Below are positions 15,829 through 61,900 of a stretch of 64,000 nucleotides of DNA, in pieces. The position numbers and the translations under genes were made by a program. The notes under the pieces are model-generated. The model was given only the letters and a program-made list of their open reading frames with translations, was not told where the DNA came from and made no database searches. Source of the DNA: Anaeramoeba ignava BMAN (lineage: Eukaryota > Protista > Anaeramoebae). The stretch covers positions 62,001-126,000 of the forward strand of contig JAPDFW010000126.1 in assembly GCA_028826165.1 (NCBI GenBank), read 5' to 3'. Positions within the stretch are counted from its first letter, which is position 1, and every line of letters starts with the position of its first letter.

Positions 15829-18800
15829 ATGAATTCTAACGAAAATAATAATGAAGAAAATAATAATAATGAAAATATTAATGAAGAAAATATTAATAAT
15901 GAAAATAATAATAATGAAAATAATAAAGAAAATAATAATGAAAATAATAATATTGAAAATGAAATGCAACAAGATTTTTTAGAAAATATTGATTCAGATA
16001 TTCAAAATATTCAAAATATTCAAGAAAATTTAAAAAAAAAGAAAAAAAGGAAAAAAAGAAAAAAAGAAGAAACAAATCAAACAAAAGAAAAAATAGAAAA
16101 ACAAGCAGGAATTATTGAAGAATTATTAATGGAAAATTTTATGTGTCATCGAAAGTTAAAAATTCGTTTAAATTCAGGTGTTAATGTTATTTTTGGTTCA
16201 AATGGTTCTGGAAAAAGTGCTATTTTTACTGCTCTTTTGTTTTGTTTAGGTGCTCATACAAGATTAACAAATAGAGGAACTAATTTAAAAGATTTAATTA
16301 GATATGGACAAAAGTAAAAAAAATGAAGGAAAATTCAAATTCAATTCAATTCAAATTCAATTCAAATTCAATTCAAATTCAAATTCAAATTCAAATTCAA
16401 ATTCAAATTCAAATTCAAATTCAAATTCAAATTCAAATTCAAATTCAAATTCAAATTCAAAATCAATTTCAAATTCAAATTCAAATTCAAATTCAATTTA
16501 ATTCAAATTCAAATTCAATTTCAAATTCAAATTCAAATTCAATTCAATTTAATTCAATTTAATTCAATTCAAATTCAATTTCAAATTCAAATTCAATTCA
16601 ATTTAATTCATAAATTCAAAATTAAAATTAAAATTCAAATTCAAATTCAAATTCAAATTCAAATTCAAATTCAAATTCAAATTCAATTCAATTCAATTCA
16701 ATTTAATTTAATTTAATTCAATTCAAATTCAAATTCAAATTCAATTTAATTTAATTCAATTTAATTCATAAATTTAATTCAAATTTAATTTAATTCAATT
16801 CAATTTAATTCAATTTAATCCAATTCAATTCAATTCAAATTCAATTTAATTTAATTCAATTCAATTTAATTCAATTTAATCCAATTCAATTCAATTCAAT
16901 TCAAATCAATTCAATTCAATTCAAATCAATTCAATTCAATTCAATTCAATTCAATTCAATTTAATTCATAAATTCAATTCAAACCAATTCAATTCAATTC
17001 ATAAATTCAATTCAATTTAATTTAATTTAATAAATTCAAATTCAATTCAAATCAATTCAATTCAATTCAATTCAATTTCATAAATTCAATTCAAATTCAA
17101 ATTAAAATTCAATTTAATTCATAAATTTAATTCAAATTCAATTAAATTAAATTTAATTCAATTTAATTCAATTTAATTCAAATTCAATTTAAATTTAATA
17201 ATTCAATTCAATTTAATTTAATTCAATTCAATTCAATTCAATTCAATTTAATTTAATTCAATTCAATTCAATTCAATTCAATTTAATTCAATTTAATTCA
17301 ATTTAATTCAAATTCAAATTCAAATTCAAATTCAAATTCAAATTCAATTCAAAATTAAATTCAATTTAATTCAAATTCAATTCAAATTCAAATTCAAAAA
17401 TTAAAATTTAAATTTAATTTAATTTAAATTCAAATTCAAATTCAAAAAAAATTAAATTTAATTTAATTTTTTAATTCAAATTCAAATTCAAAAAATTAAA
17501 TTCAAATTTTAATTTAATTTAATTTAATTTAATTCAAATTCAATTCAATTCAATTTAATTCATAAATTCAAATTCAAATTCAAAATCAATTCAATTCAAT
17601 TTAATTCATAAATTCAAATTCAAATTCAAAATCAATTCAATTCAATTTAATTCAATTCAATTCAATTTAATTTAATTCAATTCAATTCATAAATTCAATT
17701 CAATTCAATTCAATTCAATTCAATTCAATTCAATTCAATTCAAATTCAAATTCAAATTCAATTTAAATTCAATTCAATTTAATTCAATTCAATTTAATTT
17801 AATTTAATTTAATTTAATTCAATTCAATTCAATTCAATTCATAAATTCAATTCAAATTCAATTCAATTCAATTCAATTTAATTCAATTCAATTTAATTCA
17901 ATTCAATTTAATTCAATTCAATTTAATTCAATTCATAAATTTAATTTAATTCAATTTAATTCAATTCAAATTCAATTTCAATTTAATTCAATTTCAAATT
18001 CAAATTCAAATTCAAATTCAAATTCAAATTCAATTCAATTCAATTCAATTCAATTCAATTCAATTCAATTTAATTTAATTTAATTCAATTCAATTCAATT
18101 CAATTCAATTTAATTTAATTCAATTCAATTCAAATTCAAATTCAAATTCAATTCAATTTAATTCAAATTCAATTCAATTTAATTTCAATTTAATTCAATT
18201 CAAATTCAAATTCAAATTCAAATTCAATTCAATTCAATTCAATTCAATTCAATTCAATTCAATTCAATTCAATTCAATTCAATTCAATATTCAATTTAAT
18301 TTAATTTAATTCAATTTAATTCAATTCAATTCAATTTAATTTAATTCAATTCAATTCAAATTAATTTAATTTAATTCAATTTAATTTAATTCAATTTAAT
18401 TCAATTCAATTCAATTCAATTCAATTCAATTCAATTCAATTTAATTCAATTCAATTTAATTTAATTTAATTTAATTTAATTCAATTCAATTCAATTCAAT
18501 TCAATTCAATTCAATTCAATTCAATTTAATTTCAATTTAATTCAATTTAATTCAATTCAATTTAATTCAATTCAATTTAATTCAATTCATAAATTTAATT
18601 TAATTCAATTTAATTCAATTCAAATTCAATTTCAATTTAATTCAATTTCAAATTTAATTCAAATTCAATTCAAATTCAATTTCAATTTAATTCATAAATT
18701 CAATTCAATATTCAAATAAAATTAAAAAAAAAATAAAAAAGTTCGTGCAAAGTGAGAGTAAAATTATGCAACAAAGGACCAATAGCATTCGAACCAGATA

Positions 18801-21800
18801 AATTCGGAAAGCACATCTACATCGAACACAAAATCACACGAGCATCATCAACATACAAGATTTACAATTCAAAACTTGAGATGATTTCGGGGAAAAAAAA
18901 CACATTGATTCAAATACTTGACAATTTCTCAATTTTCATTGACAACCCAATTGTCATCATGCCACAAGACAAAGTGAGGGAGTTCATCAGCAAAGCGAAA
19001 CCACAGAACTTGTACCGAAACTTTGTGCGCGCGACAGGACTTGAACAGATGCAAAAATCAGTGGAAAATGCTGAGAAGACCATCAAAAACGTTGCAAACA
19101 AAGAAATCAAAAAAAAAGAAGCAATTGTGGAGAAAATCGAGCAGGAAATAAAGATCCTAAACGAGGCCATTGAGCGTGAGCAGAAGTACCAGAGTCTGAA
19201 GAAGGAATATCATTGGGCTCTTATTTCACAGGAAGAGCAAAAAGTCCGCTTGTCAGCCGTTGAAATGAGAAAACGAGCAGATAAACTGAAGCAAATGACC
19301 GAAGGTTTCGAGAAAGCGAAAAAGGATCTGATAGAAGCAGAGAGCCAGATATCCCAATTTCATGAGGAATTGGACAGTATTGAGGCCAAGTCTGAAAATA
19401 TTCAAGAAGAAAAACAAGAAATCCAAAAAAAGAAAAAACAAGTCGAGACCGAAATCCGAACAAAAGAGAAGGAGACTAAGCAAATAAAGACAAGAATGCA
19501 GGACCTCAAGAGACAGGAACAAGGGAAACAAAGGGAGCTTAAACAGGCGGAGGATTTAATGAGGGAGTATGAAGAGCGGGAAAGACGACGAAAAGAGAAA
19601 AACAAAGCGATTAAGCAAAAAATTGAGGAGTTGAATACAAAGTATAATGAGCTCAAGAAGAAGAAACCGACAGAACGGAACGAGACGGTGGAACTTGAGC
19701 GGGCAGTTTCGGAAATGACGGCCCAGCTCCGGAAAAGCAAAGATCTCGAAAATGGATTTTATCGAGAAAAAAAGGAGTTAAAAAATCAAATCAGACAAAG
19801 CGAACTTTCGGAGATGAACGAGGAGAAAAAAAGACTAAGTGCGCTGGGGGAATCTACAGAGAAGATGAAGGAGGTGATAGATAAAAACACACGGCGGTTT
19901 AAAACCGAGCCAATAGGACCACTGGGGTTAAGTATTAAATTAAGAGATGAGAAATGGATGGCAGTTTTTCAAGAAGTTTTAGGAACAGTAATGAAGTCTT
20001 TTATTGTGGGAAGTTTCGAGGACCAGAAGTCCCTTCAGAACCTCTACTACGCGGCAGTGAAGAACTCACGGCTGAAGAACCAAGAGCCAGGAATTTTCAA
20101 AACAAACTTTTCTAACAGCCGTTATAACGTCAAAATGCCAAATATCAATTGCACAATTTTCTTGCAAGTGCTTGAAATTCAGGATCCAATTATTTACAAC
20201 TGCGTGATTGATTGGGTCAAGCCCGAAACAATAGCTCTGGCAGACTCCCTCCCAGAAGCGCGGCAAATACTGCTTAATTCAAGACAATATTCTCTCAAAG
20301 TAACAAAGTGCTATCTTGTCGATGGCACGCTTTGTATGCACAAGAGATCCTTTTCTGTCATGCCTCCCACAAAATCTCGTTTTTTCAATCCAAATCAAAA
20401 TTATAACGTCAAAATTGACAAGCAGGCAATTTTGTCCCGAATTTCCCAAATTGACATCGAAATCCAAAACGCGCAATCCCAGAAGTCCGCCTTCGAGAAT
20501 CAGCTTAAACAACACCGCTCGCAAATCGACAAGATCACAAAAGACATAGAGCGAGCTGAAAGAGAAGCGCGAACTAATATTTCTGACTTGAAATACCAGA
20601 TCCAACGCAAAAAATCAAAAATTAATGAGATCGAAGAGGAACCGCCAAGAACTACCCCAGAAATATCAACAGAGATCGAAGACATCCAGAAGGATCTCAC
20701 AAGGAAAAAGGAAAAAATAGAACGCATTGAAGGAGAAATTTCGCAATCCAAATCAGAGTTGGAAGAAATTAAGAAAAAAGACGAAGAAAACTTCGAAAAA
20801 AAACGCAAATGCGACAAAAAACAAAAGGAAATTAGCACAAAATTCGGAAGAATGCTTCAACAGCAAACAGACGCGCAAAATATTGTTGAGAAAGCAGACA
20901 CCAAACGCTCAGGTTTGTTGAGCGAAATTAGCCATCTTGACACTACTCTAGAAAAAAATCTCAAAAGATTGAAGGACCACACTAAGGAATGCGTGAAAAA
21001 ATCGGGTTCCAGAATCGTCACAGATAAACCTCTTGAAGAGCTTCGAGATTTCATGAAGAAATACAAGGAAGACTCGAAAAAACTGACAAATTTGGATCGT
21101 AAAGAAATTCTTGAAAAAAATGAAGAATTGCAAAAAGTACTCAGAAATATTTCGCAGACAAAATCCGAGATCCAGACCATCGAAAAAAGAACCGAGAATA
21201 ACGCTGGATATTTGAACAAGAAATTCAACATGTTTCGCACGCAGATCCAGCAGAAATTCCAAAAGGTGCTGAGATTGAGAAGAATGAGAGGCTCACTTGT
21301 GATCAATCTTGATGAACAAAAACTTTTTTTGAATCTCAGTTTGACAGAGGAGCAACTATTGCTCTCCTCGAATAAGAACATTGTTTCCATTGAGAGCTCA
21401 CAAATCAATCCAAATTCCCCGAAAACGTCAAAAAAAAGAAATCCAAGTCAAAAAACAAAAAATAATAAAAACCCAAATAATATCAATAATAATATCAATA
21501 ATATCAATAATAATAAACAGGATTCAAGCCAAATTCCTGTTGATTCTCTTGACCAAAAAGTCAAACGGCCAAGAGTTCAATCTCAACTTAAAAATTTATC
21601 TCAATTCCGCAAGACAAAGTCTTTTTCTGGCGGAGAGAAATTGATTGTTACTGTTGCCTATCTTCTTGCTTTGTGGGGTGTTGTTGATTCTCCTTTTTAT
21701 TCGATTGATGAGTTTGATTTGTATTTTGATGATTTAAATCGCTCAATTATGTTTGATTTGTTGATTCAACATTCTTTGACTGTTCCTGATCGTCAATTTA

Positions 21801-21898
21801 TTTTTATTACTCCTCTTGATGTTAGTTTTCTTGCTGATAAAGAGAATGTTACAATTTTCAAGTTGAAAGACAAAAACAAAGAAGCGAGAGATAATTAA
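15829..21898 (+). CDS. SMC6: Structural maintenance of chromosomes protein 6
   Basis: ENFMCH and Walker A GSNGSGKS in exon 1 (15829-16313); intron 16314-18741 restores the frame (GQ|NSCKVRVKL); DNPIVIMPQD, hinge PIGPLG, signature FSGGEK, Walker B SIDEFD, QFIFITP. Confidence 0.92.
16314..18741 (+). repeat. 2.4 kb SMC6 intron made of (AATTC)n/(AAATTC)n/(AATTT)n microsatellite
   Basis: GT at 16314, AG at 18740-18741; the interior is almost exclusively A/T/C pentamer and hexamer repeats. Confidence 0.9.
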
Positions 21899-33631: not shown

Positions 33632-36600
33632 TTATTTTTTTGTGAGAACTTTTTTAAGATCTTCAATCCAAGGAATTAAAGCAGAAAGATATCCATTTGG
33701 AGAACGATAATCACCTTCACCAAGAGGTAATAAACTTTTCTGACTTAATTCTGAAAGTTTTTTGAAAAGTAATTTTCCAGCGATATTGAAATGAGGATAA
33801 AAAGAATCACCAACTCCAAAAACAGCAAATTTAAGTTTATTCAAAGAATTGGGAGACAAAGATTTCAAATGATTCCAAAAGGAAGTGGCATTTTCAGGAA
33901 AAGATCCATTCCAAAAAGTGGAAGTGACAAAAATAATGGTTTTTTCATGTTGAAGTGAAGCGAAATTAAATGAATCCATTTCAAGAACTCGTGATTTTGC
34001 TTTGAAACTGCATTCTTCTCCAATTCGAAAAGCAACTGTTTCGGCATCTCCAGTTTGAGATCCGTAGAGAACAAGAAGACCATTTTTTTGAGGAATATTT
34101 TCATTAATTTGACGTCTTTTTGTTTGCGGTGTTTTTTTTGTTTTAAGAGATGAGTAATGAATCGGATGGAAATTTTGTGTATGGAGATATTCATAAGAAA
34201 TATGAATTGAAGGTGATTTAAAGAAATCAGTATAAAGTGTTTGAACATCTGAATTATCGTTTGGATTTTGAATTGAAAATTTTGAAGTGATTTGATTGGA
34301 ACATACAATTCTTTTTGGAAGAATATTCATTTTTGATTTAGGTTGTCCACCTCCTCCAATACATCCTCCTGGACATGCCATAATTTCAACAAAATCGAAG
34401 TCATGATTTCCTGATTGCACTTTGTTTAAGAATGTTCGAATGCTGGATGATCCATCAATTACTGCTACTTTGATTCTTCTTCCTTCCATCATTAGTGTTC
34501 CTTCTGTCATGTTCGGGATTCCAAAAACTTCATTCATTTCTAATTTTGGAAATTCTTTTCTTGTTTGTGATTCATATAAACAACGAAGAGTAGATTGCTA
34601 TTTTTGAATTTGAATTGAAATTTATTTTTAAAGAATTTGAATTGAAATTTGAATTTAAATTGAAATTTGAATTTTAATTTGAATTTTTTACTAAAACACC
34701 TCCAGCAACAGAGAACGAACATCCAGCTGATGATGTTATAGAAAAAGGTGGATCAAAAGAATCTTCTTCAAGTTTCCGTAAATCAATAGAATGATTTTGA
34801 AGGATTTTTCCAAACTCTCTTACAGTAATTGATAAATCAACATCAGAAATATTTTCAGATTGAATATTTTTCAATTTATTCTGATATTTGTTTGCAATAC
34901 AAGGAGTGATCGTAACACATCGAATATTTTCAGGAGATTTTTCCAATTTTTGAGCAAAATAGCTTTTGACAACTGATCCAAAAATTTGGTTTGGTGATTT
35001 TGTTGTTGATAAATGAGGAATCAAAGAAGGATAAAGTTTTTCAATCATGTAAACCGAAGAAACACAATTTGATGTTAAAATAGGTAAAATAGCTTGAGTA
35101 TCATTAAGTCTTTTCATTAATTCTGTTGAAAGTTCAATAGCATAAATATCTGATGAAAATTGAAGACTAAAAATTGTGTGAAATCCAAGAATTCTTAATG
35201 ATTTAACAATTTGTCCTGGTGTGATTGCACCTAATTCCTTGCCATAAAGTTCACTAATTGTTGTGAATAAGGAAGGATCAATTCCAACAACAAGATGATA
35301 ATCATTTTTTTGAGTTAAGAATTGTTCAAAGATGTGAGTTTCATCAAATTCAGAAAGAGCATCACTTGGGCAATAATAACTATTAGAAAATTTTTAATTT
35401 GATTTAAATATTTTGATTTGATTTAAATATTTTGAATTAATTTGAATATTTTGAATTAATTTAAATAATTTGATTTAATTTGATTTGAATATTTTGAATT
35501 GATTTAAATATTTTAATTTAATTTAAATATTTTAATTTAATTTAAATATTTTGGTTTGATTTAAATATTTTGATTTGATTTAAATATTTTGATTTAATTT
35601 AAATATTTTTGATTTGATTTAAATATTTTGAATTAATTTAAATATTTTGATTTAATTTAAATATTTTTGATTTGATTTAAATATTTTGATTTAATTTAAA
35701 TATTTTGATTTAATTTAAATATTTTGAATTGATTTAAATATTTTGGATTGATTTAAATATTTTGAATTAATTTAAATAATTTGATTTGATTTAAATATTT
35801 TGAATTAATTTAAATATTTTGAATTAATTTAAATATTTTGAATTAATTTGAATATTTTGAATTGATTTAAATATTTTAATTTGATTTAAATATTTTAATT
35901 TAATTTAAATATTTTAATTTAATTTAAATATTTTGAATTGATTTAAATATTTTGAATTGATTTAAATATTTTGATTTGATTTAAATATTTTGAATTGATT
36001 TAAATATTTTGAATTAATTTGAATATTTTGAATTAATTTAAATAATTTGATTTAATTTGATTTGAATATTTTGATTTGATTTAAATATTTTAATTTAATT
36101 TAAATATTTTGAATTAATTTAAATATTTTAATTTGATTTAAATATTTTGATTTAATTTGAATATTTTGATTTGATTTAAATATTTTAATTTGATTTAAAT
36201 AGTTTGATTTGATTTAAATATTTTGATTTAATTTAAATATTTTGATTTAATTTGAATATTTTGATTTGATTTAAATATTTTGATTTAATTTGAATATTTT
36301 TGATTTAATTTGAATATTTTTGATTTGAATTTAAATATTTTGATTTAATTTGAATATTTTGATTTAATTTAAATATTTTAATTTGATTTAAATAGTTTGA
36401 TTTGATTTAAATATTTTGATTTAATTTAAATATTTTGAATTGATTTAAATATTTTGAATTGATTTAAATATTTTAATTTGATTTGAATATTTTGAATTGA
36501 TTTAATTTAAATATTTTGAATTAATTTGAATATTTTGATTTGATTTAAATATTTTTGATTTAATTTGAATATTTTTGATTTGAATTTAAATATTTTGAAT

Positions 36601-39600
36601 TGATTTAAATAGTTTGATTTGATTTAAATATTTTGATTTGATTTAAATATTTAGAATTGATTTAAATATTTTGAATTGATTTAAATATTTTGATTTGATT
36701 TAAATATTTTAATTTAATTTAAATATTTTGATTTGATTTAAATATTTTGATTGATTTAAATATTTTGATTTGATTTAAATATTTTGAATTGATTTAAATA
36801 TTTTGATTTAATTTAAATATTTTGATTTGATTTAATTTAAATATTTTGAATTGATTTAAATATTTTAATTTGATTTAATTTAAATATTTTGAATTGATTT
36901 AAATATTTTAATTTGATTTAAATATTTTAATTTGATTTAAATATTTTGAATTGATTTAAATATTTTTGATTTGATTTAAATATTTTTGATTTGATTTAAA
37001 TATTTTGAATTAATTTAAATATTTTGATTTAATTTAAATAATTTGATTTAATTTGATTTGAATATTTTGATTTAATTTAAATATTTTGATTTAATTTAAT
37101 TCAAATATTTTAATTTAATTTAAATATTTTGGATTGATTTAATTTAAATATTTTGAATTGATTTAAATATTTTGAATTGATTTGAATATTTTGAATTGAT
37201 TTAAATATTTTGATTTGATTTAAATATTTTGAATTGATTTAAATATTTTGATTTAATTTAAATATTTTAATTTACGTGCATAAACCACAATAAATACAAT
37301 CAGAATCACTTAAAGATTTCCCATTTACTTTTAATGTTGATTGATGAGGACCTTCAGTTTCTTCAAGTGAAAAAACAGAAATTCCTTGAATTCTTGAACA
37401 AACTTAGAAAGAAAAAAAGAAAAAAAGAAAAATCAAAAACATGATTTGAATATTTAATTTGGGAAAGATAAAAAAAATATACCTTGTTCACATCTTCCAC
37501 AATCAATACATTTAGATAAATCAAGAGTAACTGCTTGAGTTGAATTATCAATGAAACATTGATTGGAACTTTGCAAAAAATCAGTTAATTCATTTGAATT
37601 TCCCATTTTTTCAGACATTAAATTCATATTTCGTGATTCAATTTTGGAAGTTAAATTCAAAAGACTTTTACGTAAACTTTCCTTTGTAAGATCAGTATCA
37701 GTTCTTATATTCATTCCTTCTCTAATAGGAGTAGCACAAGAACAACATTTTTTGAAGGAATGACCAATTCCTTCAATTTCAACAACACAAAATTTGCAAG
37801 TAGCCAAAGGATGAAGACTAGGATGATAACATAAACTTTGCACATTTGCTCCTGATTTGCGACAAGCCTCAAGAACATTTAAATTGGAATCAACATGACA
37901 TCTTTTGCCATTAATAGTGACAACCACTTTAGTTTGACTGACATTTTTTCCTTTTAAAACAAAATCCTTTTTGAATCGAGTGATTTTTTCTTTTTCTTGT
38001 TGAATCAATGAAAGCGAACGTGAACGTGATTTGGAATATGAACTAACAAGAGGCCAACGGATGATATTCCGATCTTCTGAACCACTAAGAATAGCGCCAC
38101 TTGGGCTTATTTTGATTGTTGATATCGGCGCACTGTGTCCTTCAAGTAAAGATACACAACTTTCGTTATTTAAATTCCATACTTTGATTTTTCCATCAGT
38201 TCCTCCAGATACTAAATATGAATCTTGCATTTGGATTACCCTTACTTTCCCTGCGTGTGCTGATATAAACTTCCCTTTGCTCTTTTTCTCAGAAAATATT
38301 CCAATTTTTCCATCCCATGAACCACTGTAGATTTTATTGTTATAAAGAAGTAATTGAACAACTGCATATTCATGTCCTTCATATGTTTTAATACATTTTC
38401 CTGACTAAATAAATTTTATTTTGAATTTGATTTTGATTTTAATTTTGAATTTGAATTTGATTTTGAATTTACTTTGGTATCCCAAGATTTAATTGTACAA
38501 TCTAAATAATAAAAGAAATTAAAAAATTTATTAAGAATTTTAATTTCAAAAAAATCATAAAAATTATTTTACCATTTGAACCAGTATAAAGAATTTGTTT
38601 TTCTTCATCAAAAGCCATTGAAAGAACCCAATTTTGATGACCTTTAAAAGTTAAAATTTGTTGAGAATTCTAAAAATGAAAGAAAAGATAATAAATATTT
38701 ATTTTGTTTTGAATATTTAATATTTATTAAATATTTATTTAAATATTTGATTTATTTTAAATATTTATTTGATTTATTTTGAATATTTAAATATTTAATA
38801 TTTTGAATATTTAAATATTTGTTTTGTTTTGAATATTTAATATTTATTTAATATTTATTTAATATTTATTTAATATTTATTTTTAATATTTATTTAATAT
38901 TTATTTAATATTTATTTAATATTTATTTAAATATTTGTTTAATATTTTGAATATTTTAATATTTGTTTTGTTTGAATATTTAAATATTTGTTTTTGTTTG
39001 AATATTTAAATATTTAATATTTTGAATATTTAAATATTTAATATTTTGAATATTTAAATATTTGTTTGAATATTTGATTTATTTTAAATATTTAATATTT
39101 ATTTAATATTTATTTTATTTAAATATTTATTTAATATTTATTTTGTTTTTAATATTGAATATTTATTTAATATTTAATATTTAATATTTATTTTGAATAT
39201 TTAATATTTAAATATTTGATTTGTTTGAATATTTGATTTGTTTGAATATTTTTTTAAAATACTTCAACATCCCATAAAATAGCTTGTGAATCCATTGAAG
39301 AAGAAAATAACCTCTTTTGGTCAATTGTTGCATATAATTGACTAATTTGATCAGTATGAGCAAGATATTGTCTAATAAGATTCCCATTTGAAGTATTCCA
39401 TAACTTAATTGTATGATCGACTCCACCTGAAAAAAGAAGGTCATTACGATTGTGAAAAGAAGAAACTTTGCCTTCATGACCCTTAAAAATAGTCAAGGGA
39501 TGATAATTCATAACATCCCAAGAAATCAACACTCCTTTAATATCACAACTATATAAAATTCCTTTATGAATATTAAGTGAATTAACAAATGATTCATGTT

Positions 39601-39960
39601 TAGAAAGTGTTGCAACACATTTTCCAGTCTTTTTTTGAAATGTTGAGAATTTTTTTATTTTTTATTTATTTTATTTAATTTATTTTGAGAAAATTCGTTT
39701 TCAAAATGAAAAATTTTTTTTTTTTTTTGCTTTTTACATCAAAATCCCAACATTTAATAACATTTTCATTTGCGCAAGTATAAAATTGATTTTCATCTGT
39801 TGAAACTTCTATTGAATTTATTGCACTTTCATGAGCTTCAACTTGAAATAACGGTTCAATTGTCTAAATTTATTTAAAAATTTGATTTTAAATTTATTTT
39901 TCCAAAAAAAATAATTATTATTGAGATCTTTACTTGTGTATTATTTGATGAAGTATTCAT
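33632..39960 (-). CDS. WD40-repeat / [FeFe]-hydrogenase-like / flavodoxin fusion protein (~1115 aa, 9 exons)
   Basis: Exons 39960-39934, 39863-39738, 39628-39263, 38669-38573, 38501-38473, 38404-37483, 37402-37276, 35379-34692 and 34597-33632 total 3348 nt, all GT-AG and in frame. ~8 WD40 repeats; 2Fe-2S domain (LCYH..TCKFC..SCATP); 2x4Fe-4S (CIDCGRC..VC; CIYCGLC..YCP); H-domain (TSNCVS, TPCIANK, EIMACPGGCIGGGGQP); small-subunit-like segment; flavodoxin (LYGSQTGDAE, TSTFWNG, FAVFGVGDSFY.HFN). Confidence 0.9.
35380..37275 (-). repeat. 1.9 kb intron of ~19-20 bp minisatellite (TTTAAATATTTTGATTTGA-like) splitting the second 4Fe-4S motif
   Basis: Lies between ...CGLC and TYYCP; GT/AG ends on the minus strand. 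Confidence 0.88.
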
Positions 39961-53467: not shown

Positions 53468-55830
53468 TTTTTTAAAATTATAATTTAAAATTTAATTAAA
53501 TGTTTAAATATATATTTTACTTTATTTATTTAATATATATTATTAATCAAAAATTGAAATTAATTTAATATAAAAATATAAATAAATTTAATAACTTTAA
53601 TAAATTAATAAATTAATAAATTATTTTAAAATTATAATTTAAAATATAATTAAATGTTTAAATATATATTTTACTTTATTTATTTAATATATATTATTAA
53701 TTAAAAATTGAAATTAATTTAATATAAAAATATAAATAAATTTAATAACTTTAATAAATTAATTAATAAATAAATTATTTTAAAATTATAATTTAAAATT
53801 TAATTAAATGTTTAAATATATATTTTACTTTATTTATTTAATATATATTATTAATTAAAAATTGAAATTAATTTAATATAAAAATATAAATAAATTTAAT
53901 AACTTTAATAAATTAATTAATAAATAAATTATTTTAAAATTATAATTTAAAATTATAATTAAATGTTTAAATATATATTTTACTTTATTTATTTAATATA
54001 TATTATTAATCAAAAATTGAAATTAATTTAATATAAAAATATAAATAAATTTAATAACTTTAATAAATTAATTAATTAATAAATTATTTTAAAATTATAA
54101 TTTTAAATATAATTAAATGTTTAAATACATATTTTACTTTATTTATTTAATATATATTATTAATCAAAAATTGAAATTAATTTAATATAAAAATATAAAT
54201 AAATTTAATAACTTTAATAAATTAATTAATAAATAAATTATTTTAAAATTATAATTTAAAATTTAATTAAATGTTTAGATATATATTTTACTTTATTTAT
54301 TTAATATATATTATTAATCAAAAATTGAAATTAATTTAATATAAAAATATAAATAAATTTAATAACTTTAATAAATTAATTAATAAATAAATTATTTTAA
54401 AATTATAATTTAAAATATAATTAAATGTTTAAATATATATTTTACTTTTATTTATTTAATATATATTATTAATCAAAAATTGAAATTAATTTAATATAAA
54501 AATATAAATAAATTTAATAACTTTAATAAATTAATTAATTAATAAATTATTTTAAAATTATAATTTATATTATAATTAAATGTTTAAATATATATTTTAC
54601 TTTATTTATTTAATATATATTATTAATCAAAAATTGAAATTAATTTAATATAAAAATATAAATAAATTTAATAACTTTAATAAATTAATTAATAAATAAA
54701 TTATTTTAAAATTATAATTTAAAATATAATTAAATGTTTAGATATATATTTTACTTTATTTATTTAATATATATTATTAATCAAAAATTGAAATTAATTT
54801 AATATAAAAATATTAATAAATTTAATAACTTTAATAAATTAATTAATAAATAAATTATTTTAAAATTATAATTTTAAATATAATTAAATATTTAAATATA
54901 TATATTACTTTTATTTATTTAATATATGTTATTAATCAAAATTGAAATTAATTTAATATAAAAATATAAATAAATTTGATAACTTTAATAAATTAATTAA
55001 TTAATAAATTATTTTAAAATTATAATTTAAAAATTTAATTAAATGTTTAGATATATATTTTTACTTTATTTATTTAATATATATTATTAATCAAAAATTG
55101 AAATTAATTTAATCTAAAAATATTAATAAATTTAATAACTTTAATAAATTAATTAATAAATAAATTATTTTAAAATTATAATTTAAAATATAATTAAATG
55201 TTTAGATATATATTTTACTTTATTTATTTAATATATATTATTAATCAAAAATTGAAATTAATTTAATATAAAAATATAAATAAATTTAATAACTTTAATA
55301 AATTAATTAATTAATAAATTATTTTAAAATTATAATTTTAAATTAAATTAAATGTTTAAATATATATTTTATTTTTATTTATTTAATATATATTATTAAT
55401 CAAAAATTGAAATTAATTTAATCTAAAAATATAAATAAATTTAATAACTTTAATAAATTAATTAATTAATAAATTATTTTAAAATTATAATTTAAAATAT
55501 AATTAAATGTTTAAATATATATTTTACTTTATTTATTTAATATATATTATTAATCAAAAATTGAAATTAATTTAATATAAAAATATAAATAAATTTAATA
55601 ACTTTAATAAATTAATTAATAAATAAATTATTTTAAAATTATAATTTAAAATTAAATTAAATGTTTAAATATATATTTTACTTTATTTATTTAGTATATA
55701 TTATTAATTAAAAATTGAAATTAATTTAATCTAAAAATATTAATAAATTTAATAACTTTAATAAATTAATTAATAAATAAATTATTTTAAAATTATAATT
55801 TAAAATTTAATTAAATGTTTAAATATATAA
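53468..55830. repeat. Tandem satellite, 154-155 bp unit, ~15.3 copies, very low GC
   Basis: Anchor TGTTTA(A/G)ATA recurs at 53501, 53655, 53809, 53964, 54118, 54272, 54426, 54581, 54735, (54889 variant), 55044, 55199, 55353, 55508, 55662 and 55816. Confidence 0.95.
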
Positions 55831-55916
55831 TTAACTTATTCAAAAAAAAAAGCAAAAATATTTTTCCAAATTTTTTTTTTCATTTTTTTTTTTCAAATTT
55901 TAATTTTGTTAACAAA

Positions 55917-58900
55917 ATGAATTTTTTCAGTTTTGATCAACAAAATAATCCAGTTACAAAAATTTTTCCAGAATTTGAAGGGTTTCTAACACCTGAAAAG
56001 GATCAATTCCACACATTGCTTTACAATTTCTATTCAACAAGTGCAGCAAAAGTTGTAATTGATCGAAAAATAAAAGAAATAAAAGAAACCTCAGAAAGAC
56101 AAGAATCAACACTTTGGAGAATGGAGAGCCGTTCACAAACACAATCCAAATATTGTCACGGAAACCATTTAACAGCAAGCGTTACTTACACTGTTGCTAT
56201 TTATGATTCTGATGTTGCGATGAAACTGAACCAAACGTATTCGCAACTGATCCGAAGTTGTCATACTGAGTTGTGTGAGATAACTACCAAAGTGGAGACA
56301 ACAGAAGCGAAGGTTGCGCTTTATTTACAGAGAGTTTTCCAGGGAATTCCTTTTAAAAGCCTTCGAAACGATGAGAATATGAACCTTCAGTTCATCCAAC
56401 AATTGCGTTCTCTTTTGATCAATTTGTTTTTTTTTGAAAGACTTGCGATTGAAACAGGCGAGGTTTATTACGATAAGTTTAACAATTCTCTGCACAAATG
56501 GATCAATACTGTTGCTCTTCGTTTGTATGAAATTGGGTCTAATAATCAAATGCTTTTTGTGTTTTTTCATTTATTAACAACTCCTCATTCAGGAAAATGG
56601 TCCAAAAACTTGATTTATCTTCAAGACAATTTCGATTACGATCAAATGAGTTATCTCAAAACATTATTGAAATTTGTTGTGAATCCCTTGATTAAATCAA
56701 AGACTCTTTCTGATAAGCCTTTCTATCTTCTTGAACCTGATTTTGTTCATCATCTTTCCAATCTTCCTTTTTCCAATTTTTTCGGTTATTTATTCGCAAA
56801 TCCAGGAGAGTTAGGGTTCTCAGTTGCCAGTGAGATTGTTCAGGAGTTTGTGATGATTCTCATTGAAGCGTTAGTGAGATTTGAGAAGTATCTTGATTTC
56901 CGAAAAACAATTGCTGATCTCATGTTCCATTTCTTTTGGCTTTATGATGAGTTTTCGCACCATATCAACACACCCGATGCCGCAAGAGACTACCCCAAGA
57001 TCATTGATGAGCTCACTACGATATCGATTGGAAGAGTCTCTGCTTGTCAAGACAAGTCAATTCTTTTTTATTTCACTGATCTTCCTTTTTATTCTTTATC
57101 TGTTTTTGCTGGATTTCGAATTATGAGTCTTTTCTTCACAGGTTCTGACCAGAATCCCCCACAAAACCCCGAGCAATGGTACCAGCTTATGAATAGTGAT
57201 CCCAGTCTTGTTAGTCGTTTCGGGTCTCTTCTTCAGTCATCTAACGGAGGAGAAAGTATGCTTATCATTCTTGCAAATTTGGCAGTTCTTTTAAATTCGC
57301 CAGATTTTGCTTTGTGTGTTGTTGATTTGATTTTCAGAGTCAGTTGTGTTGTAGATACCACAAAAGACAGAATATTCCCGCATGGAAAAAAACCCTTGCA
57401 ACAATCACCACAGAATATCCCTTTCTGGTTTCAAATATTCTCGCTCTCACTTCCCAATATATTGGTGTTGTCGGTTCTCGCAGTATGGATTTATTTGGTG
57501 CTCTTCCTCTCTCCAAATGGAAACTGAATGACAACGATCTCTCAGTGATTCAAACATATCTCGATATGCCAAACGATTCCGTTCAGTTTGTCTTTGGGTC
57601 TTGGCTTGTGGATAATCTTTTTTGGGGATATTCGCCAGAGATTGATGGCACAGGCGTGCTCAATGATAGTGAGGCGCAGTTCAAAATTATACCGTGTATT
57701 TTGAAAGTGTTTTTACGACAAACCAAGAATAAAAGTCTCATTGATTGGTGTTGGCGTGCTCTTTATCGATTCAATGTTTACAATAAATTTGGCGAACCAA
57801 ATGGAACTTTACTTAAATTTCCCAATGATTCTCGTCTTGATTTGTCCAAGCATATCCCAAAAGGATAAGAAACAATCCCCTGAACCTTTTATCGCATTTC
57901 TCGCCCTGATGTTTTTCGAGATCCGTGACAACTCCACTTGGGATCAATTCTTCCAAAATCTTTTAAAAGCCAAGGAGTATTATTCAATGACGAAAGTTCT
58001 TCATGTCAAAATTCCTCAAATTTTGAAAAATAACAAGGATCCATATTTCAAGAAAGAAGTTGCAACCATTTCAGAATTGGTAAAGCCTTTGCTCAAGATT
58101 GATAAGTTCAATGCTCATGTTGAAGAGAAAAATAAGAGCGTCAATTTCAAAAGATGCAATGCTTTGGCATCAATGATTGAATCATTAATTATGAACAGGA
58201 TGAATGTCAATGTCCCTTTTCATAAACAAGATTTTTCAAATGAAACGAGCACAAGTATCAATGATAATATTGCTAATGTCAATGAGAATATTGCTAATGT
58301 CAACGAGAATATGGATAATACAGTTCAAGGAAATTTGGATCAAAATCAAAATCAAGAAAATTTGAATCAAAATGAAAATCAAAATTTGAATGACAAGGAT
58401 AATCCAGTTCCTCTTGAAAAAATGATTCAATTCTGGTTGCAGTTTTTCGAATCGATCCCGAAATGGAACAAAGACAAGCAAATCATTAAGTATTTTGACA
58501 TCATTTTCCGTTCCGCTTTCATGTGCCGATCACGACCGTTAATCACAAGATTTATAGCAAAAGAATATAGCAAAATTGCGAAAGGCAAAAAAAAAACAGG
58601 AGTTTTTTCAAAAAAAGAAAAACAGGTTACACTAATTGATGTTGGGAAAACATTTGTGCATCGGGGAAGGACAAAAATCATGAACAAATCACCGTGGTAT
58701 TATTTTGAGGTTCTTCTTGTTGAGCTTATTTGGCACGCAGAGAGATTGGATTCATTAGGAATCAAAATCAATAAATCAAAAGATATTCCATTGAAACAAA
58801 TTCTCAAGAAAAATAAAATCAACACAAATTTTGATATCATCAACTGGTGGATTGAGTTTGTCACTGATCTTAAAGAAAACAACCGACTTCTTCCTATTGT

Positions 58901-61900
58901 AATGCAAGTTGTGTGCTCGATTTATTTTCTCTGCACATTCAAAGGAACAACAACATTGGATACTGTGAAAGATTCGGATTGGTTTGGCAAAAATCTTTTA
59001 GAATTGACTGGCAAATCGGTTGATGATATTAAAAAACAAATTGTTGATATTCTTGATTTTGAGCTTGAAGAAGCAACTCAAACAATAAAAGATCCAAAGA
59101 AACACAAGTACAAAGATGGTGCAGTTCGCGATTACAATGCGAATATTGTGCGGATGTATCAATCAATGAAAACTTGGTTTTCGCACAAGAGTCTTCAAAG
59201 ATTGATTCCTGAACCAATTACGCAGAATCACGAAGAATTTCTCAATTTGATTCATTCGAATATTCTGAATCCTTATAAAAGCAAATTCGATCTTAAATCA
59301 CCAACAAACGAAACTCTTCTCAAGCTACACAATTCTCTCTGGTTCCATCTTTTGAGCATGCAGAAAATCATGAACGACATCTACACAAACATGCAACTTA
59401 TCCAGGATCTTCCGAATTACGTGTATTTCCTGATCAATAAAACACTCAAACCTCGACTGCAATTTCCTCCACTTTCTTTGAAAATGGCCTTTTATCAACA
59501 TCTCACTTTCCAAAACTTGAGTCAAATTTCACAATCAAATTTGATGATTCTCAATTCGCCTGTTGTGGACTTTATATCCACTTTTTGTTCTTGACGGGAG
59601 AAATTACAACGAAATTGAGAATGATTTACAAAAAAGATACCCAATTCTTCTTGAATCCTCTTCCAAGTTTGTATCTTTCCGTTCACATCACATTTCTCTC
59701 AATAACGAATATATCTCATCAAGTACTAGTTTATATTCAAATGTCCCAACAACACAAACTGTTCACAAAACCTGTCATTATACAACCACGTCGCGAGATT
59801 CCCACGGACACACACACACTCACCATCACAGTCATCAAGTGGCATTTCATTTCAACATTACGCAAGTGGTTCAAGATTCAAATGTGAATTCAAGAATGAT
59901 CGCAAATCGGGCAACAGCTCAAACATATTTAATCCCATCAAAAAACCCCAATAATTCGCTTGGAAGTAATAATATCTCAACCTACATGGTTTATCTTGAT
60001 TTTGCCGAGCAATGCGCTGATATCGCCAAAAAACAACAGTTCCAACTTCCCGATTATCCGATCGATAATTTATGGAAAGTTTGCATTGAATGGTTTTATC
60101 AGATACTCAATTATGACTCCACTTCCTCAGACGCACAAGAGTTCCCCACAATCCAATTCCTGATCAAAGAATTCACACACATTCTTGGGATGCAATTTAT
60201 CCGCGACAACCACGAACAAATCGATGTGGTTGCACAGATTCTTATTGAGAATCCAAGATACATTCCGAGACTCGCCGCGCTTTTTAATCCCCAATTGATC
60301 CCAGCTCGAACATTGGATTACTACGCGCGCATCATCGAGTCTTATGTCCGAGGCACCGACAACATTTGCGCTCCTGTTTTGATGTCCTTCCAATTCGGAG
60401 AATGGCTCAAATCAAAGCCCAGTTCGGAAGAAATCAAACGAGCGGTTGGAATGTTCTTCCAGTTTTCAAACAAAACAATATCGGCAACATTTCCCAAACT
60501 GGCGAACTTCAATTCACAAGCTCTGTTGACAATGTCGCTCTTTGATTTCCCCACCAATTTCATTCCACTTTTTGAGCAAATTATTGCAATCACTCTTGAA
60601 AAACAAGCAATTCCTTCGTTATGGGATATTTTCGCTAATGCTCCACTTTCCAAATTGGATCCTCAGTTCATACAACAATTAGGCAGTCTTGTTTCCGAGA
60701 GCTTTATGAGCAATCTGACCCAAATCATCACAAGTCAAACTCTTTATGAATATTTTGAACCAGAATTACTTTCATCTTTCATGCGTTTTTTCGAATCGCT
60801 AATTATTTCTCTTTGCCAAAATCAGGCTGTCGCAGAAATCAACACACAATTCCAACCTTGTCTCACTTCACAATTACTTTTTAATCTATATCTTCCCTTC
60901 ATTGGTTTTGTTACCGTAAATTCACAAAATGTGCCGACATTCCGCGAAAACTCTCCTTTTACCAACGAGGCATTCGCATCTTTTTGTCGATCTGTTTCAA
61001 CACTTCAAGCTGCCTATCCATGGACTCTTACAGACTTTATTTCCTTGTTCTTTTCCACTTTATCTCATATTACTATTCCCAACGTAATCGGGAAATATTT
61101 CCAGCATTTATCATCCACAATCAACTGGGAACAAACACAACCAACGCTGGAATCCATGAACCAATTACTCGCTCTCAGCATGTCTCCTCATCACGATCTC
61201 ATCCGTGTTATTATCTCTCGCATTTCCTGGAAACAAGCAGAGCAAATGCTTGTGAATATCCAAAATCCACAATCATTATTTTTCTACCAGCTCTTGTTCC
61301 AGATCATTTTGAACTTGATACAGAGATACCAACGATATTCAGACACAGGATACGCAACATTTTTCCTCAATTTTCTTGATACAGTGACAAAATCACTTTT
61401 CTGGGAAAATCTCAACGCAATGAGTTATCATTCAATTCTCGAATCATTTAGTGTTGATCCAAATTTAGTTCAATACAACCGACAAATTCAACTTGATTTC
61501 AACATTGAATTCGAATCAATGAAATTCCCGACGAATATCACCAATTCTGAGCAGCGCGGATTTGTTCTTCTCACAGCCATCCGCAAAATCGGATTTTTCG
61601 ACAACGATCTCAATTATGATCATATCATCCCGTTTCTTCAATTTGCAACTTACATACTTTCCGTTTCTGCTCCAATTCTCCGTTCTCAACCAATTGAGGA
61701 AAAGGATGATTTTTGGAAATCACTTTTTAGCAAGAAAAAACCACAAGATTCTGGATATAGAATTGTCAAAGTGCCTGATTTTGCTGTTCCCTTTTCGCAC
61801 ACTAATTTCTCTCTTATTTTCGCCGATCTCATCCGTGTTGCTCTTCTCGATGTGACCCAATCCAAGCCCAATCTTGCCTTCGCATTTGATCTTTTCTCAA

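What the first reader, a model, noticed from the sequence alone, without database searches (positions are those of the whole stretch)
34370..35290. The hydrogenase domain looks catalytically dead while keeping its Fe-S cysteines
Compared by eye with Clostridium CpI motifs. P1 TSCCP becomes TSNCV (proton-transfer Cys299 -> Asn). TIMEEATE becomes YAIELSTE (proton-relay Glu279 -> Leu). P2 MPCxxKxxE becomes TPCIANKYQ (Met353 -> Thr, CN-binding Lys358 -> Asn, Glu -> Gln). APS/APA becomes DPS, and GGVMEAA becomes GGVLQST. P3 EIMACPGGCIGGGGQP and all four [4Fe-4S]H ligand cysteines are intact. Inference: it binds the cubane but probably lacks a working 2Fe subsite or proton path, making it a pseudo-hydrogenase (sensor, electron conduit or cluster carrier) apparently distinct from Nar1.
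Basis: partly seen in the sequence, partly recalled or inferred. Interest (0 to 1): 0.85.

Follow-up and report, generated by a model that had tools for sequence, protein, structure and literature searches.

The report
Expressed hydrogenase paralog without catalytic residues
In the anaerobic amoeba Anaeramoeba ignava, one of four WD40-hydrogenase-flavodoxin fusion genes keeps every iron-sulfur cysteine but has lost the residues that hold the di-iron catalytic subcluster and deliver protons, yet it is still transcribed, spliced and under selection, so it is probably a recently evolved non-catalytic "pseudo-hydrogenase".

Summary
The stretch is exons 8-9 of a 9-exon minus-strand gene (33632-39960) of Anaeramoeba ignava. 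The product is 1115 aa, identical to public KAJ5067518.1 "iron hydrogenase". Domain order: WD40 propeller, 2Fe-2S, two 4Fe-4S, H-domain, flavodoxin.

HMMER alignment to CpI gives C299N, E279L, K358N, E361Q, A230D, M353T and Q325N. All 16 Fe-S cysteines are kept, including C300, C355, C499 and C503.

Eleven other family members (3 A. ignava paralogs, 8 A. flamelloides) keep the canonical C299, E279, K358 and E361. Of 225 homologues, only this protein lacks C299, E279, K358 and E361 together.

It is a fast-evolving, species-specific paralog (terminal branch 1.21 versus 0.13-0.32). It scores below NCBI's group-A cut-off (345 versus 406 bits; its paralog scores 477).

It is not a decaying gene:
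- The 3345-nt reading frame is intact.
- A transcript-like contig lacks two of its introns.
- Conserved sites are kept preferentially (p=3e-4).
- The AF2 model is confident (TM 0.85 to CpI).

Best reading: a cubane-only H-domain that no longer turns over H2 and acts as a redox or scaffold module. It is independent of Nar1, which the genome encodes separately. A low-activity sensory-type enzyme is not excluded. Moderate interest; a new variant of a known kind.

The parts
33632..39960 (-). Whole gene: 9 exons, 1115 codons plus stop. Exons: 39934-39960, 39738-39863, 39263-39628, 38573-38669, 38473-38501, 37483-38404, 37276-37402, 34692-35379, 33632-34597.
   Evidence: Manual GT-AG model. Each exon translation maps contiguously onto public protein P0002 (KAJ5067518.1, 1115 aa).
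37925..39863 (-). WD40 beta-propeller, about 8 blades (P0002 residues ~10-365), spread over exons 2-6.
   Evidence: Pfam WD40 and several beta-propeller models. Best PDB sequence matches are generic WD40 and WDR5-type proteins; no CIAO1 among the top 60.
37694..37933 (-). 2Fe-2S ferredoxin-like domain (Fer2_4). Conserved-Cys columns C396, C407, C418, C421 and C438 are kept.
   Evidence: Pfam PF13510, E=1.7e-12; conserved-Cys columns.
35370..37510 (-). Two 4Fe-4S ferredoxin motifs (C514/517/520/524 and C558/561/564/568). They are split by an 80-nt intron and by the 1.9-kb tandem-repeat intron.
   Evidence: All eight cysteines are in 100%-conserved Cys columns.
35380..37275 (-). Intron 7, made almost entirely of about 97 copies of a 19-nt tandem repeat.
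   Evidence: TRF hit at 35388-37273, period 19, 96.7 copies. The intron is absent from the X4 transcript-like contig, whose loose end at 35379 continues into the end of exon 7.
34349..35297 (-). H-domain (Fe_hyd_lg_C) with the degenerate active site, interrupted by intron 8 (34598-34691).
   Evidence: Pfam PF02906, 5.4e-47 and 5e-14. CpI alignment. AF2 model pLDDT 90, TM 0.85 to CpI.
35064..35069 (-). P1 motif core: N669 (CpI C299, the proton relay, lost) and C670 (CpI C300, a cubane ligand, kept).
35130..35132 (-). L648 = CpI E279 (inner proton-relay glutamate, lost).
34881..34907 (-). P2 motif: T723 (M353), C725 (C355, kept), N728 (K358, lost), Q731 (E361, lost).
35277..35279 (-). D599 = CpI A230 of the APS loop next to the distal cyanide.
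34340..34390 (-). P3 motif, intact: M867 (M497), C869 (C499), C873 (C503), GGGGQP.
34175..34294 (-). Small-subunit-like C-terminal wrap (Fe_hyd_SSU).
   Evidence: Pfam PF02256, 1.9e-6.
33668..34072 (-). C-terminal flavodoxin (FMN) domain of CysJ/CPR/NDOR1 type.
   Evidence: Pfam PF00258, 1.2e-27. Best PDB match is the NDOR1 FMN domain 4h2d, 2.8e-24. NCBIfam cysJ N-terminal part.

Best explanation
This is a transcribed, selectively maintained paralog specific to A. ignava. It belongs to an Anaeramoeba-specific family with the domain order WD40 propeller, 2Fe-2S, two 4Fe-4S, [FeFe]-hydrogenase H-domain, flavodoxin.

After duplication it evolved 4-9 times faster than its sisters. It replaced the residues that hold the [2Fe] subcluster (K358N, E361Q, A230D, Q325N) and the two innermost proton-relay residues (C299N, E279L). 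It kept the hydrogenase fold, the [4Fe-4S]H cubane ligands, the whole accessory Fe-S wire and the FMN domain.

The most likely working state (inferred) is a cubane-only H-domain, as in apo-HydA, that does not turn over H2. The protein would then be a flavin/Fe-S electron-transfer or redox-responsive module, whose WD40 propeller docks it onto partner proteins, possibly the same partners as its catalytic sisters.

Shown here: gene structure, substitutions, phylogeny, constraint, transcription and splicing, and fold retention. Inferred: absence of the [2Fe] subcluster, absence of H2 catalysis, and the electron-transfer or scaffold role.
For: - CpI-registered alignment shows the substitutions.
- The family and outgroup motif table shows only this member is altered.
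- Only 1 of 225 homologues lacks C299, E279, K358 and E361 together.
- All 16 Fe-S cysteines are kept.
- In the tree the family is monophyletic at 100/100. This protein is sister to the three A. ignava paralogs (93/88), with a terminal branch of 1.21 versus 0.13-0.32.
- It changed 27% of family-invariant H-domain columns, versus 1-5% in the canonical paralogs and 15% in its own other domains.
- TIGR02512 (group A) scores 344.9, below the 405.95 cut-off; paralog P0003 scores 477.3.
- It is still constrained. The ancestral residue is kept at 79% of sites conserved in outgroups versus 52% of variable sites (Fisher p=3e-4).
- In a neutral-drift simulation, 0 of 100 runs kept the frame open, with at least 14 stops even at 20% amino-acid divergence.
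- All three sequence variants seen between runs are synonymous.
- It is transcribed and spliced. The run X4 contig lacks intron 8 exactly (34598-34691) and joins exon 8 to exon 7.
- The AF2 model has pLDDT 90 and pTM 0.90, and matches CpI at TM 0.85 over the full length.
- Literature: C299 substitutions other than Asp abolish or severely impair activity, and sensory enzymes keep the [2Fe]-stabilising residues (PMC10055695; PMC6695573).
- From my own knowledge: Knorzer et al. 2012, J Biol Chem 287:1489, reported that exchanging the lysine equivalent to K358 gives protein without an intact H-cluster. The text is not held in the library; the reference is listed.
Against: - No biochemical data exist for this protein or for any member of its family.
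- Sensory hydrogenases lacking C299 and the canonical proton path still bind [2Fe] and turn over slowly (PMC8163306, PMC10055695). Proton-path loss alone therefore does not prove inactivity.
- Asn or Gln might still hydrogen-bond a cyanide ligand.
- M497, F417, P231, S232, P324, S319, E282 and R286 are retained, so part of the pocket is intact.
- The genome encodes HydF and HydG, so maturation is possible in principle.
- The proposed electron-transfer or scaffold role has no direct support.
Confidence: 0.62

Rival explanations
1. It is still a [2Fe]-containing hydrogenase of low activity, a convergent 'sensory-type' enzyme. It would bind H2 at an H-cluster with an altered second sphere and report through its Fe-S chain, flavodoxin or WD40 propeller rather than carry metabolic flux.
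For: - Like group C/D HydS enzymes it lacks C299 and E279 and has a hydroxyl residue at M353 (PMC8163306; PMC10055695).
- M497, F417, P231/S232 and P324 are kept.
- HydF and HydG are present in the genome.
- It is maintained by selection and expressed.
Against: - Sensory enzymes conserve the residues that stabilise the [2Fe] cofactor by hydrogen bonding. Here K358, its partner E361, A230 and Q325 are all changed.
- Among 225 homologues, 219 have Lys at position 358.
- It has no PAS domain or C-terminal four-Cys sensor module.
- M353T also occurs in the canonical paralog P0152, so it is not a sensory signature here.
Confidence: 0.2
2. It is a cytosolic Fe-S assembly (CIA)-like device. A Nar1-like cubane carrier would be fused to a Cia1-like WD40 propeller and a Tah18/NDOR1-like FMN domain, re-creating the CIA late-acting and electron-donor modules in one chain.
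For: - The best solved-structure match of the flavodoxin domain is the NDOR1 FMN domain.
- The cubane is kept while catalytic residues are lost, which parallels Nar1.
- Nar1 is known to bind WD40 Cia1-containing complexes (PMC13451876, listed).
Against: - The WD40 and flavodoxin domains are shared by all 11 canonical-looking family members. They pre-date the degeneration and are not specific to it.
- The WD40 domain matches generic WDR5-type propellers, with no CIAO1 in the top 60.
- The flavodoxin derives from the Hyd-CysJ fusion clade of other anaerobic protists.
- The genome has its own Nar1 candidate ending in the C-terminal Trp, whereas this protein ends in ...TKK.
- It has an N-terminal 2Fe-2S domain and a small-subunit-like tail, which are not part of the Nar1 architecture as I know it.
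Confidence: 0.08
3. It is a dying gene: a recent duplicate drifting towards a pseudogene, with the catalytic losses being simple decay.
For: - Long terminal branch.
- No orthologue in A. flamelloides and no closer homologue among 1.8 billion representatives.
- Elevated change in all four domains.
- The word depth of its transcript contig is lower than that of a paralog's contig. This is not a reliable expression measure.
Against: - 1115 codons across 9 exons carry no stop or frameshift in a genome where neutral drift creates at least 14 stops by 20% divergence (0 of 100 simulations stayed open).
- All splice sites are canonical, and a spliced transcript contig exists.
- All 16 metal-binding cysteines are kept.
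- Losses avoid conserved structural sites (79% versus 52% retention, p=3e-4).
- The fold prediction is confident.
Confidence: 0.05

Closest known systems
Group A [FeFe]-hydrogenases (CpI of Clostridium pasteurianum; HydA1 of the Thermoanaerobacter kivui HydABC complex)
   Same: - Same fold: TM 0.85 to CpI over 574 residues.
- Best sequence match is 8a6t HydA1, 8e-43.
- It has the 2Fe-2S domain, two 4Fe-4S motifs, the H-domain and the small-subunit-like tail.
- All cubane ligands and the P3 motif are present.
   Different: - C299N, E279L, K358N, E361Q, A230D, Q325N, P301V and W303S.
- It scores below the TIGR02512 cut-off.
- It lacks the His-ligated FS4C cluster, as does the whole protist Hyd-CysJ/Fld clade.
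- It has an extra N-terminal WD40 propeller and a C-terminal flavodoxin.
Its own paralogs: Anaeramoeba WD40-HydA-flavodoxin proteins (A. ignava KAJ5077271.1 = P0003, plus P0151 and P0152; A. flamelloides P0153-P0158, P0005, P0266)
   Same: Identical domain order, 38-45% identity, one monophyletic family at 100/100.
   Different: - All 11 others keep TSCCP, MEE and PCxxKKxE. Ten of the 11 also keep GGVME; P0266 reads SSGVLSS there.
- This member's terminal branch is 4-9 times longer.
- It changed 27% of family-invariant H-domain positions, against 1-11% in the others.
Nar1 / CIAO3 / NARFL, the hydrogenase-like protein of cytosolic Fe-S assembly
   Same: It is a eukaryotic H-domain protein that keeps the four cubane cysteines, and it is presumed not to make H2.
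   Different: - It has a different, much more recent origin, nested in a group-A-derived family specific to one genus.
- It carries a 2Fe-2S domain, two 4Fe-4S motifs, a small-subunit-like tail, WD40 and flavodoxin domains.
- It has no C-terminal Trp.
- A separate Nar1 candidate exists at G000:C90.
Putative sensory [FeFe]-hydrogenases of groups C and D (TmHydS, TamHydS)
   Same: Loss of C299 and of the canonical proton-transfer residues; a hydroxyl residue at the M353 position (PMC8163306).
   Different: - HydS enzymes keep the [2Fe]-stabilising residues and bind the cofactor (PMC10055695). Here K358, E361, A230 and Q325 are changed.
- M497 is kept here.
- It has no PAS domain or C-terminal Cx2Cx4Cx16C module.
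- It belongs to a different phylogenetic group.
HydA-CysJ / HydA-flavodoxin fusions of anaerobic protists (Tritrichomonas P0170, Paratrimastix P0016, P0040, P0159)
   Same: Sister clade at 95/98 support. It shares the 2Fe-2S, 4Fe-4S, H-domain and flavodoxin order, and lacks FS4C.
   Different: Most of those carry the FAD/NAD(P)H reductase half of CysJ and have canonical active sites. The Anaeramoeba family has lost that half and gained a WD40 propeller.

Membership tests
[FeFe]-hydrogenase group A (catalytic) | Whole-domain profile score above the curated cut-off (NCBIfam TIGR02512, 405.95 bits) | tested here: not met
   P0002 scores 344.9 bits. Paralog P0003 scores 477.3 bits.
[FeFe]-hydrogenase group A (catalytic) | H-domain fold with four cysteines ligating [4Fe-4S]H (C300, C355, C499, C503) | tested here: met
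   C670, C725, C869 and C873 lie in conserved Cys columns (C355/C499/C503 invariant; C300 92-100%). AF2 model matches CpI at TM 0.85.
[FeFe]-hydrogenase group A (catalytic) | P1 motif TSCCP with the proton-relay Cys299 | tested here: not met
   The motif reads TSNCV, i.e. C299N and P301V. 212 of 225 homologues have Cys at 299.
[FeFe]-hydrogenase group A (catalytic) | P2 motif MPCxxKxxE with the CN-binding Lys358 and Glu361 | tested here: not met
   The motif reads TPCIANKYQ, i.e. K358N and E361Q. K is present in 219 of 225 homologues and E in 223 of 225.
[FeFe]-hydrogenase group A (catalytic) | Complete proton-transfer path R286-E282-S319-E279-C299 | tested here: not met
   R286, E282 and S319 are kept. 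E279L and C299N break the inner two steps.
[FeFe]-hydrogenase group A (catalytic) | Binds the [2Fe] subcluster and turns over H2 | not testable with these tools
   Needs in vitro maturation with [2Fe]adt, FTIR/EPR and activity assays.
Nar1 / CIAO3 | C-terminal tryptophan that docks onto the CIA targeting complex | tested here: not met
   The protein ends in ...VLTKK. The C90 locus product ends in ...TTNW.
Nar1 / CIAO3 | Phylogenetic placement with the pan-eukaryotic Nar1 clade and the Nar1 architecture (single N-terminal 4-Cys cluster, no 2Fe-2S domain) | tested here: not met
   It nests in the Anaeramoeba WD40-HydA-Fld family at 100/100 and has Fer2_4 plus two 4Fe-4S motifs. No Nar1 sequences were included in the tree itself.
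Sensory [FeFe]-hydrogenases (groups C/D) | Conserved [2Fe]-stabilising hydrogen-bond residues together with altered C299/M353/M497 | tested here: not met
   C299 and M353 are altered, but K358, E361, A230 and Q325 are altered too, and M497 is kept (criteria from PMC10055695).
Sensory [FeFe]-hydrogenases (groups C/D) | C-terminal four-Cys cluster motif and/or PAS domain | tested here: not met
   Pfam finds only the SSU-like region and Flavodoxin_1 after the H-domain.
Anaeramoeba WD40-HydA-flavodoxin family | Domain order WD40 propeller, Fer2_4, two 4Fe-4S, Fe_hyd_lg_C, Fe_hyd_SSU, Flavodoxin_1, and monophyly | tested here: met
   Pfam; collinear tblastn matches to three paralog loci; tree support 100/100.

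The most novel reading that the evidence does not exclude
This is an independent, evolutionarily young replay of the hydrogenase-to-Nar1 transition. A group-A enzyme would have been converted, within one genus, into a cubane-only Fe-S protein that is positively maintained. It would work as a redox sensor, a cluster carrier or a regulatory subunit of its catalytic WD40-HydA-flavodoxin sisters. With canonical paralogs at 40-45% identity as built-in controls, it would be a natural experiment showing which residues must change to switch off [2Fe] insertion.
Probability: 0.3. Interest if true: 0.7.

Novelty: new variant of a known kind. Interest (0 to 1): 0.52.

Why it matters
Hydrogenase-like proteins that kept the cubane but gave up H2 chemistry are known mainly from the ancient Nar1 lineage. 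How such a switch happens is not documented step by step. Here the switch is recent, and it sits next to three canonical paralogs in the same genome and eight in a sister species. The set of changes (K358N, E361Q, A230D, Q325N, C299N, E279L) can therefore be read directly and tested by swapping residues between paralogs.

It also warns that counting "iron hydrogenase" annotations overstates the H2-producing capacity of Anaeramoeba, an organism whose syntrophy with sulfate reducers is thought to depend on H2. A. ignava has at least two such degenerate H-domain genes.

The parent family itself, a WD40 propeller fused to a hydrogenase and a flavodoxin, was not described in the papers I could search.

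Tried and rejected
- **CIA-fusion idea** (Cia1-like WD40 + Nar1-like + Tah18-like). Rejected as the main reading. The WD40 and flavodoxin domains are shared with all canonical paralogs. The WD40 domain matches generic WDR5-type propellers. A separate Nar1 candidate exists.
- **FS4C loss as a sign of degeneration.** Rejected. The His/Cys FS4C motif is missing in the whole protist Hyd-CysJ/Fld clade.
- **M353T as a dead or sensory marker.** Rejected. Paralog P0152 also has Thr and other members have Val.
- **Orthologue-based dN/dS.** Not possible. No orthologue exists in A. flamelloides or elsewhere (next best 45%), and paralog dS would be saturated. The only polymorphism data are 3 synonymous differences, too few for a rate.
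- **Literature searches** for a WD40-hydrogenase fusion or for K358N data found nothing relevant. Stairs et al. 2021 (Curr Biol) and Knorzer et al. 2012 are not held, so I cannot exclude that the fusion family is mentioned there.
- **First hmmalign motif table** had a coordinate bug. It was discarded and redone.
- **Model coordinates** are not exposed, so pocket geometry could not be measured.
- **GC-richer ORF blocks** in the window gave no Pfam hits.
- **Handling of the spliced model.** No typed joined sequence was sent to any search tool. Exons were searched by reference until a search returned the identical public protein P0002, which was used after that. The exons were joined only inside one script, to count stops in a drift simulation.
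Full report
**What is at the locus.** The window is extremely AT-rich (GC 5-39%, mostly about 18%) and the gene lies on the minus strand with GT-AG introns. I built a nine-exon model by hand:

| Exon | Window coordinates |
|---|---|
| 1 | 39934-39960 |
| 2 | 39738-39863 |
| 3 | 39263-39628 |
| 4 | 38573-38669 |
| 5 | 38473-38501 |
| 6 | 37483-38404 |
| 7 | 37276-37402 |
| 8 | 34692-35379 |
| 9 | 33632-34597 |

Exon translations searched by reference gave WD40 repeats, Fer2_4, Fe_hyd_lg_C (5e-47 and 5e-14), Fe_hyd_SSU and Flavodoxin_1. A search of 1.8 billion representative proteins with exon 8 returned a public 1115-aa protein, P0002, that is 100% identical over the exon. All nine exon translations map contiguously onto it. 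It is KAJ5067518.1 / A0A9Q0L7I9, annotated "iron hydrogenase" of Anaeramoeba ignava.

I sent no typed joined sequence to any search tool. After I used the database entry P0002. The exons were joined only inside one script, for a simulation.

**Check of the observation.** The phmmer alignment to CpI crystal structures fixes the register.
- **Replaced:** C299N (with P301V and W303S), E279L, M353T, K358N, E361Q and A230D. GGVMEAA reads GGVL|QST across intron 8.
- **Kept:** C300, C355, C499, C503, M497, F417, P231/S232, P324, S319, E282 and R286.
- All other conserved cysteines, of the 2Fe-2S site and of both 4Fe-4S sites, are also present.
- Against 25 other sequences (11 family members and 14 outgroups), P0002 differs at 27 positions where at least 85% of the others agree. 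Twenty-six of these lie in the H-domain. Eleven are at columns invariant in all others: A230, R234, D267, A272, T275, E279, C299, P301, W303, K358 and E361.
- In an HMM-registered table of 225 homologues, Lys358 is present in 219, Glu361 in 223, Cys299 in 212 and Glu279 in 213. Only P0002 lacks all four.

The one caveat is that M353T is not informative, because canonical paralog P0152 also has Thr.

**Family context.** The A. ignava assembly (42.8 Mb) has at least nine H-domain loci. Three of them (contigs C1, C104 and C138; proteins P0003, P0151 and P0152) are collinear with this gene from the WD40 propeller to the flavodoxin, at 39-50% identity per exon. They carry canonical TSCCP, MEE, PCTxKKQE and GGVMEAA motifs. 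A. flamelloides has at least eight more members, all with canonical C299, E279, K358 and E361; one, P0266, has a partly altered GGVME motif.

A maximum-likelihood tree (LG+C20+F+G4 PMSF, 27 rows) gives these results:
- The WD40-HydA-flavodoxin family is monophyletic (100/100).
- It is sister to the HydA-CysJ/flavodoxin fusions of other anaerobic protists (95/98).
- P0002 is sister to the three A. ignava paralogs (93/88).
- Its terminal branch is 1.21 substitutions per site, against 0.13-0.32 for those paralogs.

No orthologue exists in A. flamelloides, and nothing closer than 45% was found anywhere. P0002 is thus a species- or lineage-specific duplicate that accelerated strongly. Its placement at the base of the A. 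ignava clade could be pulled by the long branch.

**Is it decaying?** Five results say no.
1. The 3345-nt reading frame is open. When I let the coding sequence drift with the gene's own base composition, every one of 100 replicates had at least 14 stop codons by the time amino-acid divergence reached 20%. Observed divergence from the nearest paralog is about 55%.
2. Changes are not spread evenly. I took sites where the ancestral residue can be inferred from the paralogs plus A. flamelloides. P0002 keeps 79% of sites that are also conserved in outgroup hydrogenases, but 52% of variable ones (81/102 versus 35/67, Fisher p=3e-4).
3. The gene is transcribed and spliced. Run X4 (another sample and study, same organism code) holds a 1728-nt contig that skips exactly 34598-34691 (ends CT..AC on the plus strand, which is GT..AG on the gene strand). 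At 35379 the contig continues into the last 30 nt of exon 7, so it also lacks the 1.9-kb repeat intron. The DNA runs X1 and X2 are collinear with the genome.
4. The three single-base differences seen among runs are all third-position synonymous changes. That is too few for a rate, but it points in the expected direction.
5. The AlphaFold2 model of residues 372-945 is confident (mean pLDDT 90, pTM 0.90). It superposes on CpI at TM 0.85 over the whole chain.

**Where the relaxation is.** At columns invariant in the ten other family members, P0002 has changed:

| Region | Columns changed | Share |
|---|---|---|
| H-domain | 28 of 103 | 27% |
| Other domains together | 15 of 100 | 15% |

The difference has p=0.04. 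The same leave-one-out statistic gives 1-5% in the H-domain for the canonical paralogs and 8-11% for the two most divergent A. flamelloides members. The H-domain is the best-conserved domain among the sisters (67-74% identity) but the least-retained one in P0002. The whole protein therefore sped up, and the active-site shell sped up most, while the metal-binding skeleton did not change.

**What the changes mean.**
- C299 is the immediate proton donor and acceptor of the bridgehead amine. Substitutions other than Asp abolish or severely impair activity (PMC10055695; PMC6695573).
- E279 is the next relay residue.
- Sensory group C/D enzymes also lack these residues, yet they conserve the residues that stabilise the [2Fe] cofactor by hydrogen bonding, and they do bind it (PMC10055695; PMC8163306).
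- P0002 additionally lacks the cyanide-binding Lys358, its partner Glu361, Ala230 of the APS loop and Gln325.
- From my own knowledge (Knorzer et al. 2012, J Biol Chem 287:1489; not held in the library, reference seen), exchange of the equivalent lysine gave inactive protein without an intact H-cluster.

Together this makes a cubane-only H-domain the most likely state. By curated criteria P0002 also falls out of the catalytic family: TIGR02512 scores 344.9 bits against a cut-off of 405.95, while P0003 scores 477.3.

**Rivals.**
- *A low-activity, sensory-type enzyme* cannot be excluded without spectroscopy. Part of the pocket (M497, F417, P231/S232, P324) is intact and the genome encodes HydF and HydG. 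I give this 0.2.
- *A CIA-like device* was tempting, because the flavodoxin's best solved match is the NDOR1 FMN domain and Nar1 works with a WD40 protein. Four results argue against it. The WD40 and flavodoxin domains are ancestral to the whole family, canonical members included. The WD40 domain resembles generic WDR5-type propellers rather than CIAO1. The flavodoxin comes from the CysJ-fusion clade. The genome has a separate Nar1 candidate on contig C90 whose product ends in Trp.
- *Plain pseudogenisation* is contradicted by the five results above.

**Novelty and score.** The gene model and protein are public but carry only an automatic name. Full-text searches found no description of a WD40-hydrogenase fusion or of this degenerate member. 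The A. ignava genome paper mentions host hydrogenases only in passing. I could not read Stairs et al. 2021.

Hydrogenase-like proteins without H2 chemistry are a known kind (Nar1, and arguably HydS). This one is an independent, recent instance within group A, in an unusual fusion architecture. Similar sporadic degenerate group-A-like proteins occur in metagenomes, for example E279T/C299S/K358S in a Gemmatimonadota MAG protein, and are likewise uncharacterised.

I rate it a new variant of a known kind, with moderate interest (0.52). Its value lies in the built-in paralog controls.

Noticed in passing
window 33632-39960; G000:C1:~1684050-1688400; G000:C104:~1009600-1013900; G000:C138:~53800-56450: The parent architecture is itself unusual: a WD40 propeller fused to a full [FeFe]-hydrogenase and a flavodoxin. 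There are four copies in A. ignava and at least eight in A. flamelloides. One of the latter (P0156, 1707 aa) has an extra N-terminal extension with filamin and B-box Pfam hits. It was found only in Anaeramoeba among the databases searched and was not described in the papers I could read.
   Followed up: partly
G000:C129:27011-27868 (L004/L016): A second, independently degenerate H-domain paralog. P1 reads SSSCS, P2 reads MRCSLKND and P3 reads CEQGC with the GGGGQP stretch lost. All four cubane cysteines are kept. It is about 28% identical to this gene.
   Followed up: partly
window 35388-37273 and 38707-39217: Two introns of this gene consist almost wholly of AT-rich tandem repeats. One has about 97 copies of a 19-nt unit (1.9 kb) and the other about 21 copies of a 24-nt unit. 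The first is removed precisely in the transcript-like contig.
   Followed up: partly
G000:C104:980194-982917: A multi-exon HydF maturase gene lies about 29 kb upstream of the canonical WD40-HydA-flavodoxin paralog P0151 on the same contig. HydG has two to three copies (C84, and two on C62, one pair about 9 kb apart).
   Followed up: no
G000:C90:248061-249393 (L017:4161-5643): A distant multi-exon H-domain gene whose last exon ends in ...TTNW. A C-terminal Trp is the hallmark of Nar1/CIAO3, so this is probably the true Nar1 orthologue.
   Followed up: partly
G000:C1:1678217-1678912 (L005): An intron-less H-domain ORF (522 aa open frame) with TSCCFS and IGPCFSKKQE motifs, i.e. Gly at the M353 position as in group B/C enzymes. 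It lies only about 6 kb from paralog P0003. It may be a laterally acquired or different-group hydrogenase.
   Followed up: no
window 55815-62805 (+) and 18752-21898 (+): These are GC-richer islands (30-39% against an ~18% background). The first has three consecutive long ORFs (570, 617 and 1080 aa) in shifting frames; the second has one 1048-aa ORF. None has a Pfam match at E<=1e-5. They may be a mobile element or fast-evolving lineage-specific genes.
   Followed up: partly
proteins P0070, P0107, P0045, P0056 (metagenomic; P0070 cluster includes a Gemmatimonadota MAG protein): These are group-A-like H-domain proteins, apparently bacterial (metagenome-derived), that also lack E279, C299 and K358 (for example E279T, C299S, K358S) while keeping the cubane cysteines. 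They form an uncharacterised, sporadic class of degenerate hydrogenase homologues.
   Followed up: partly
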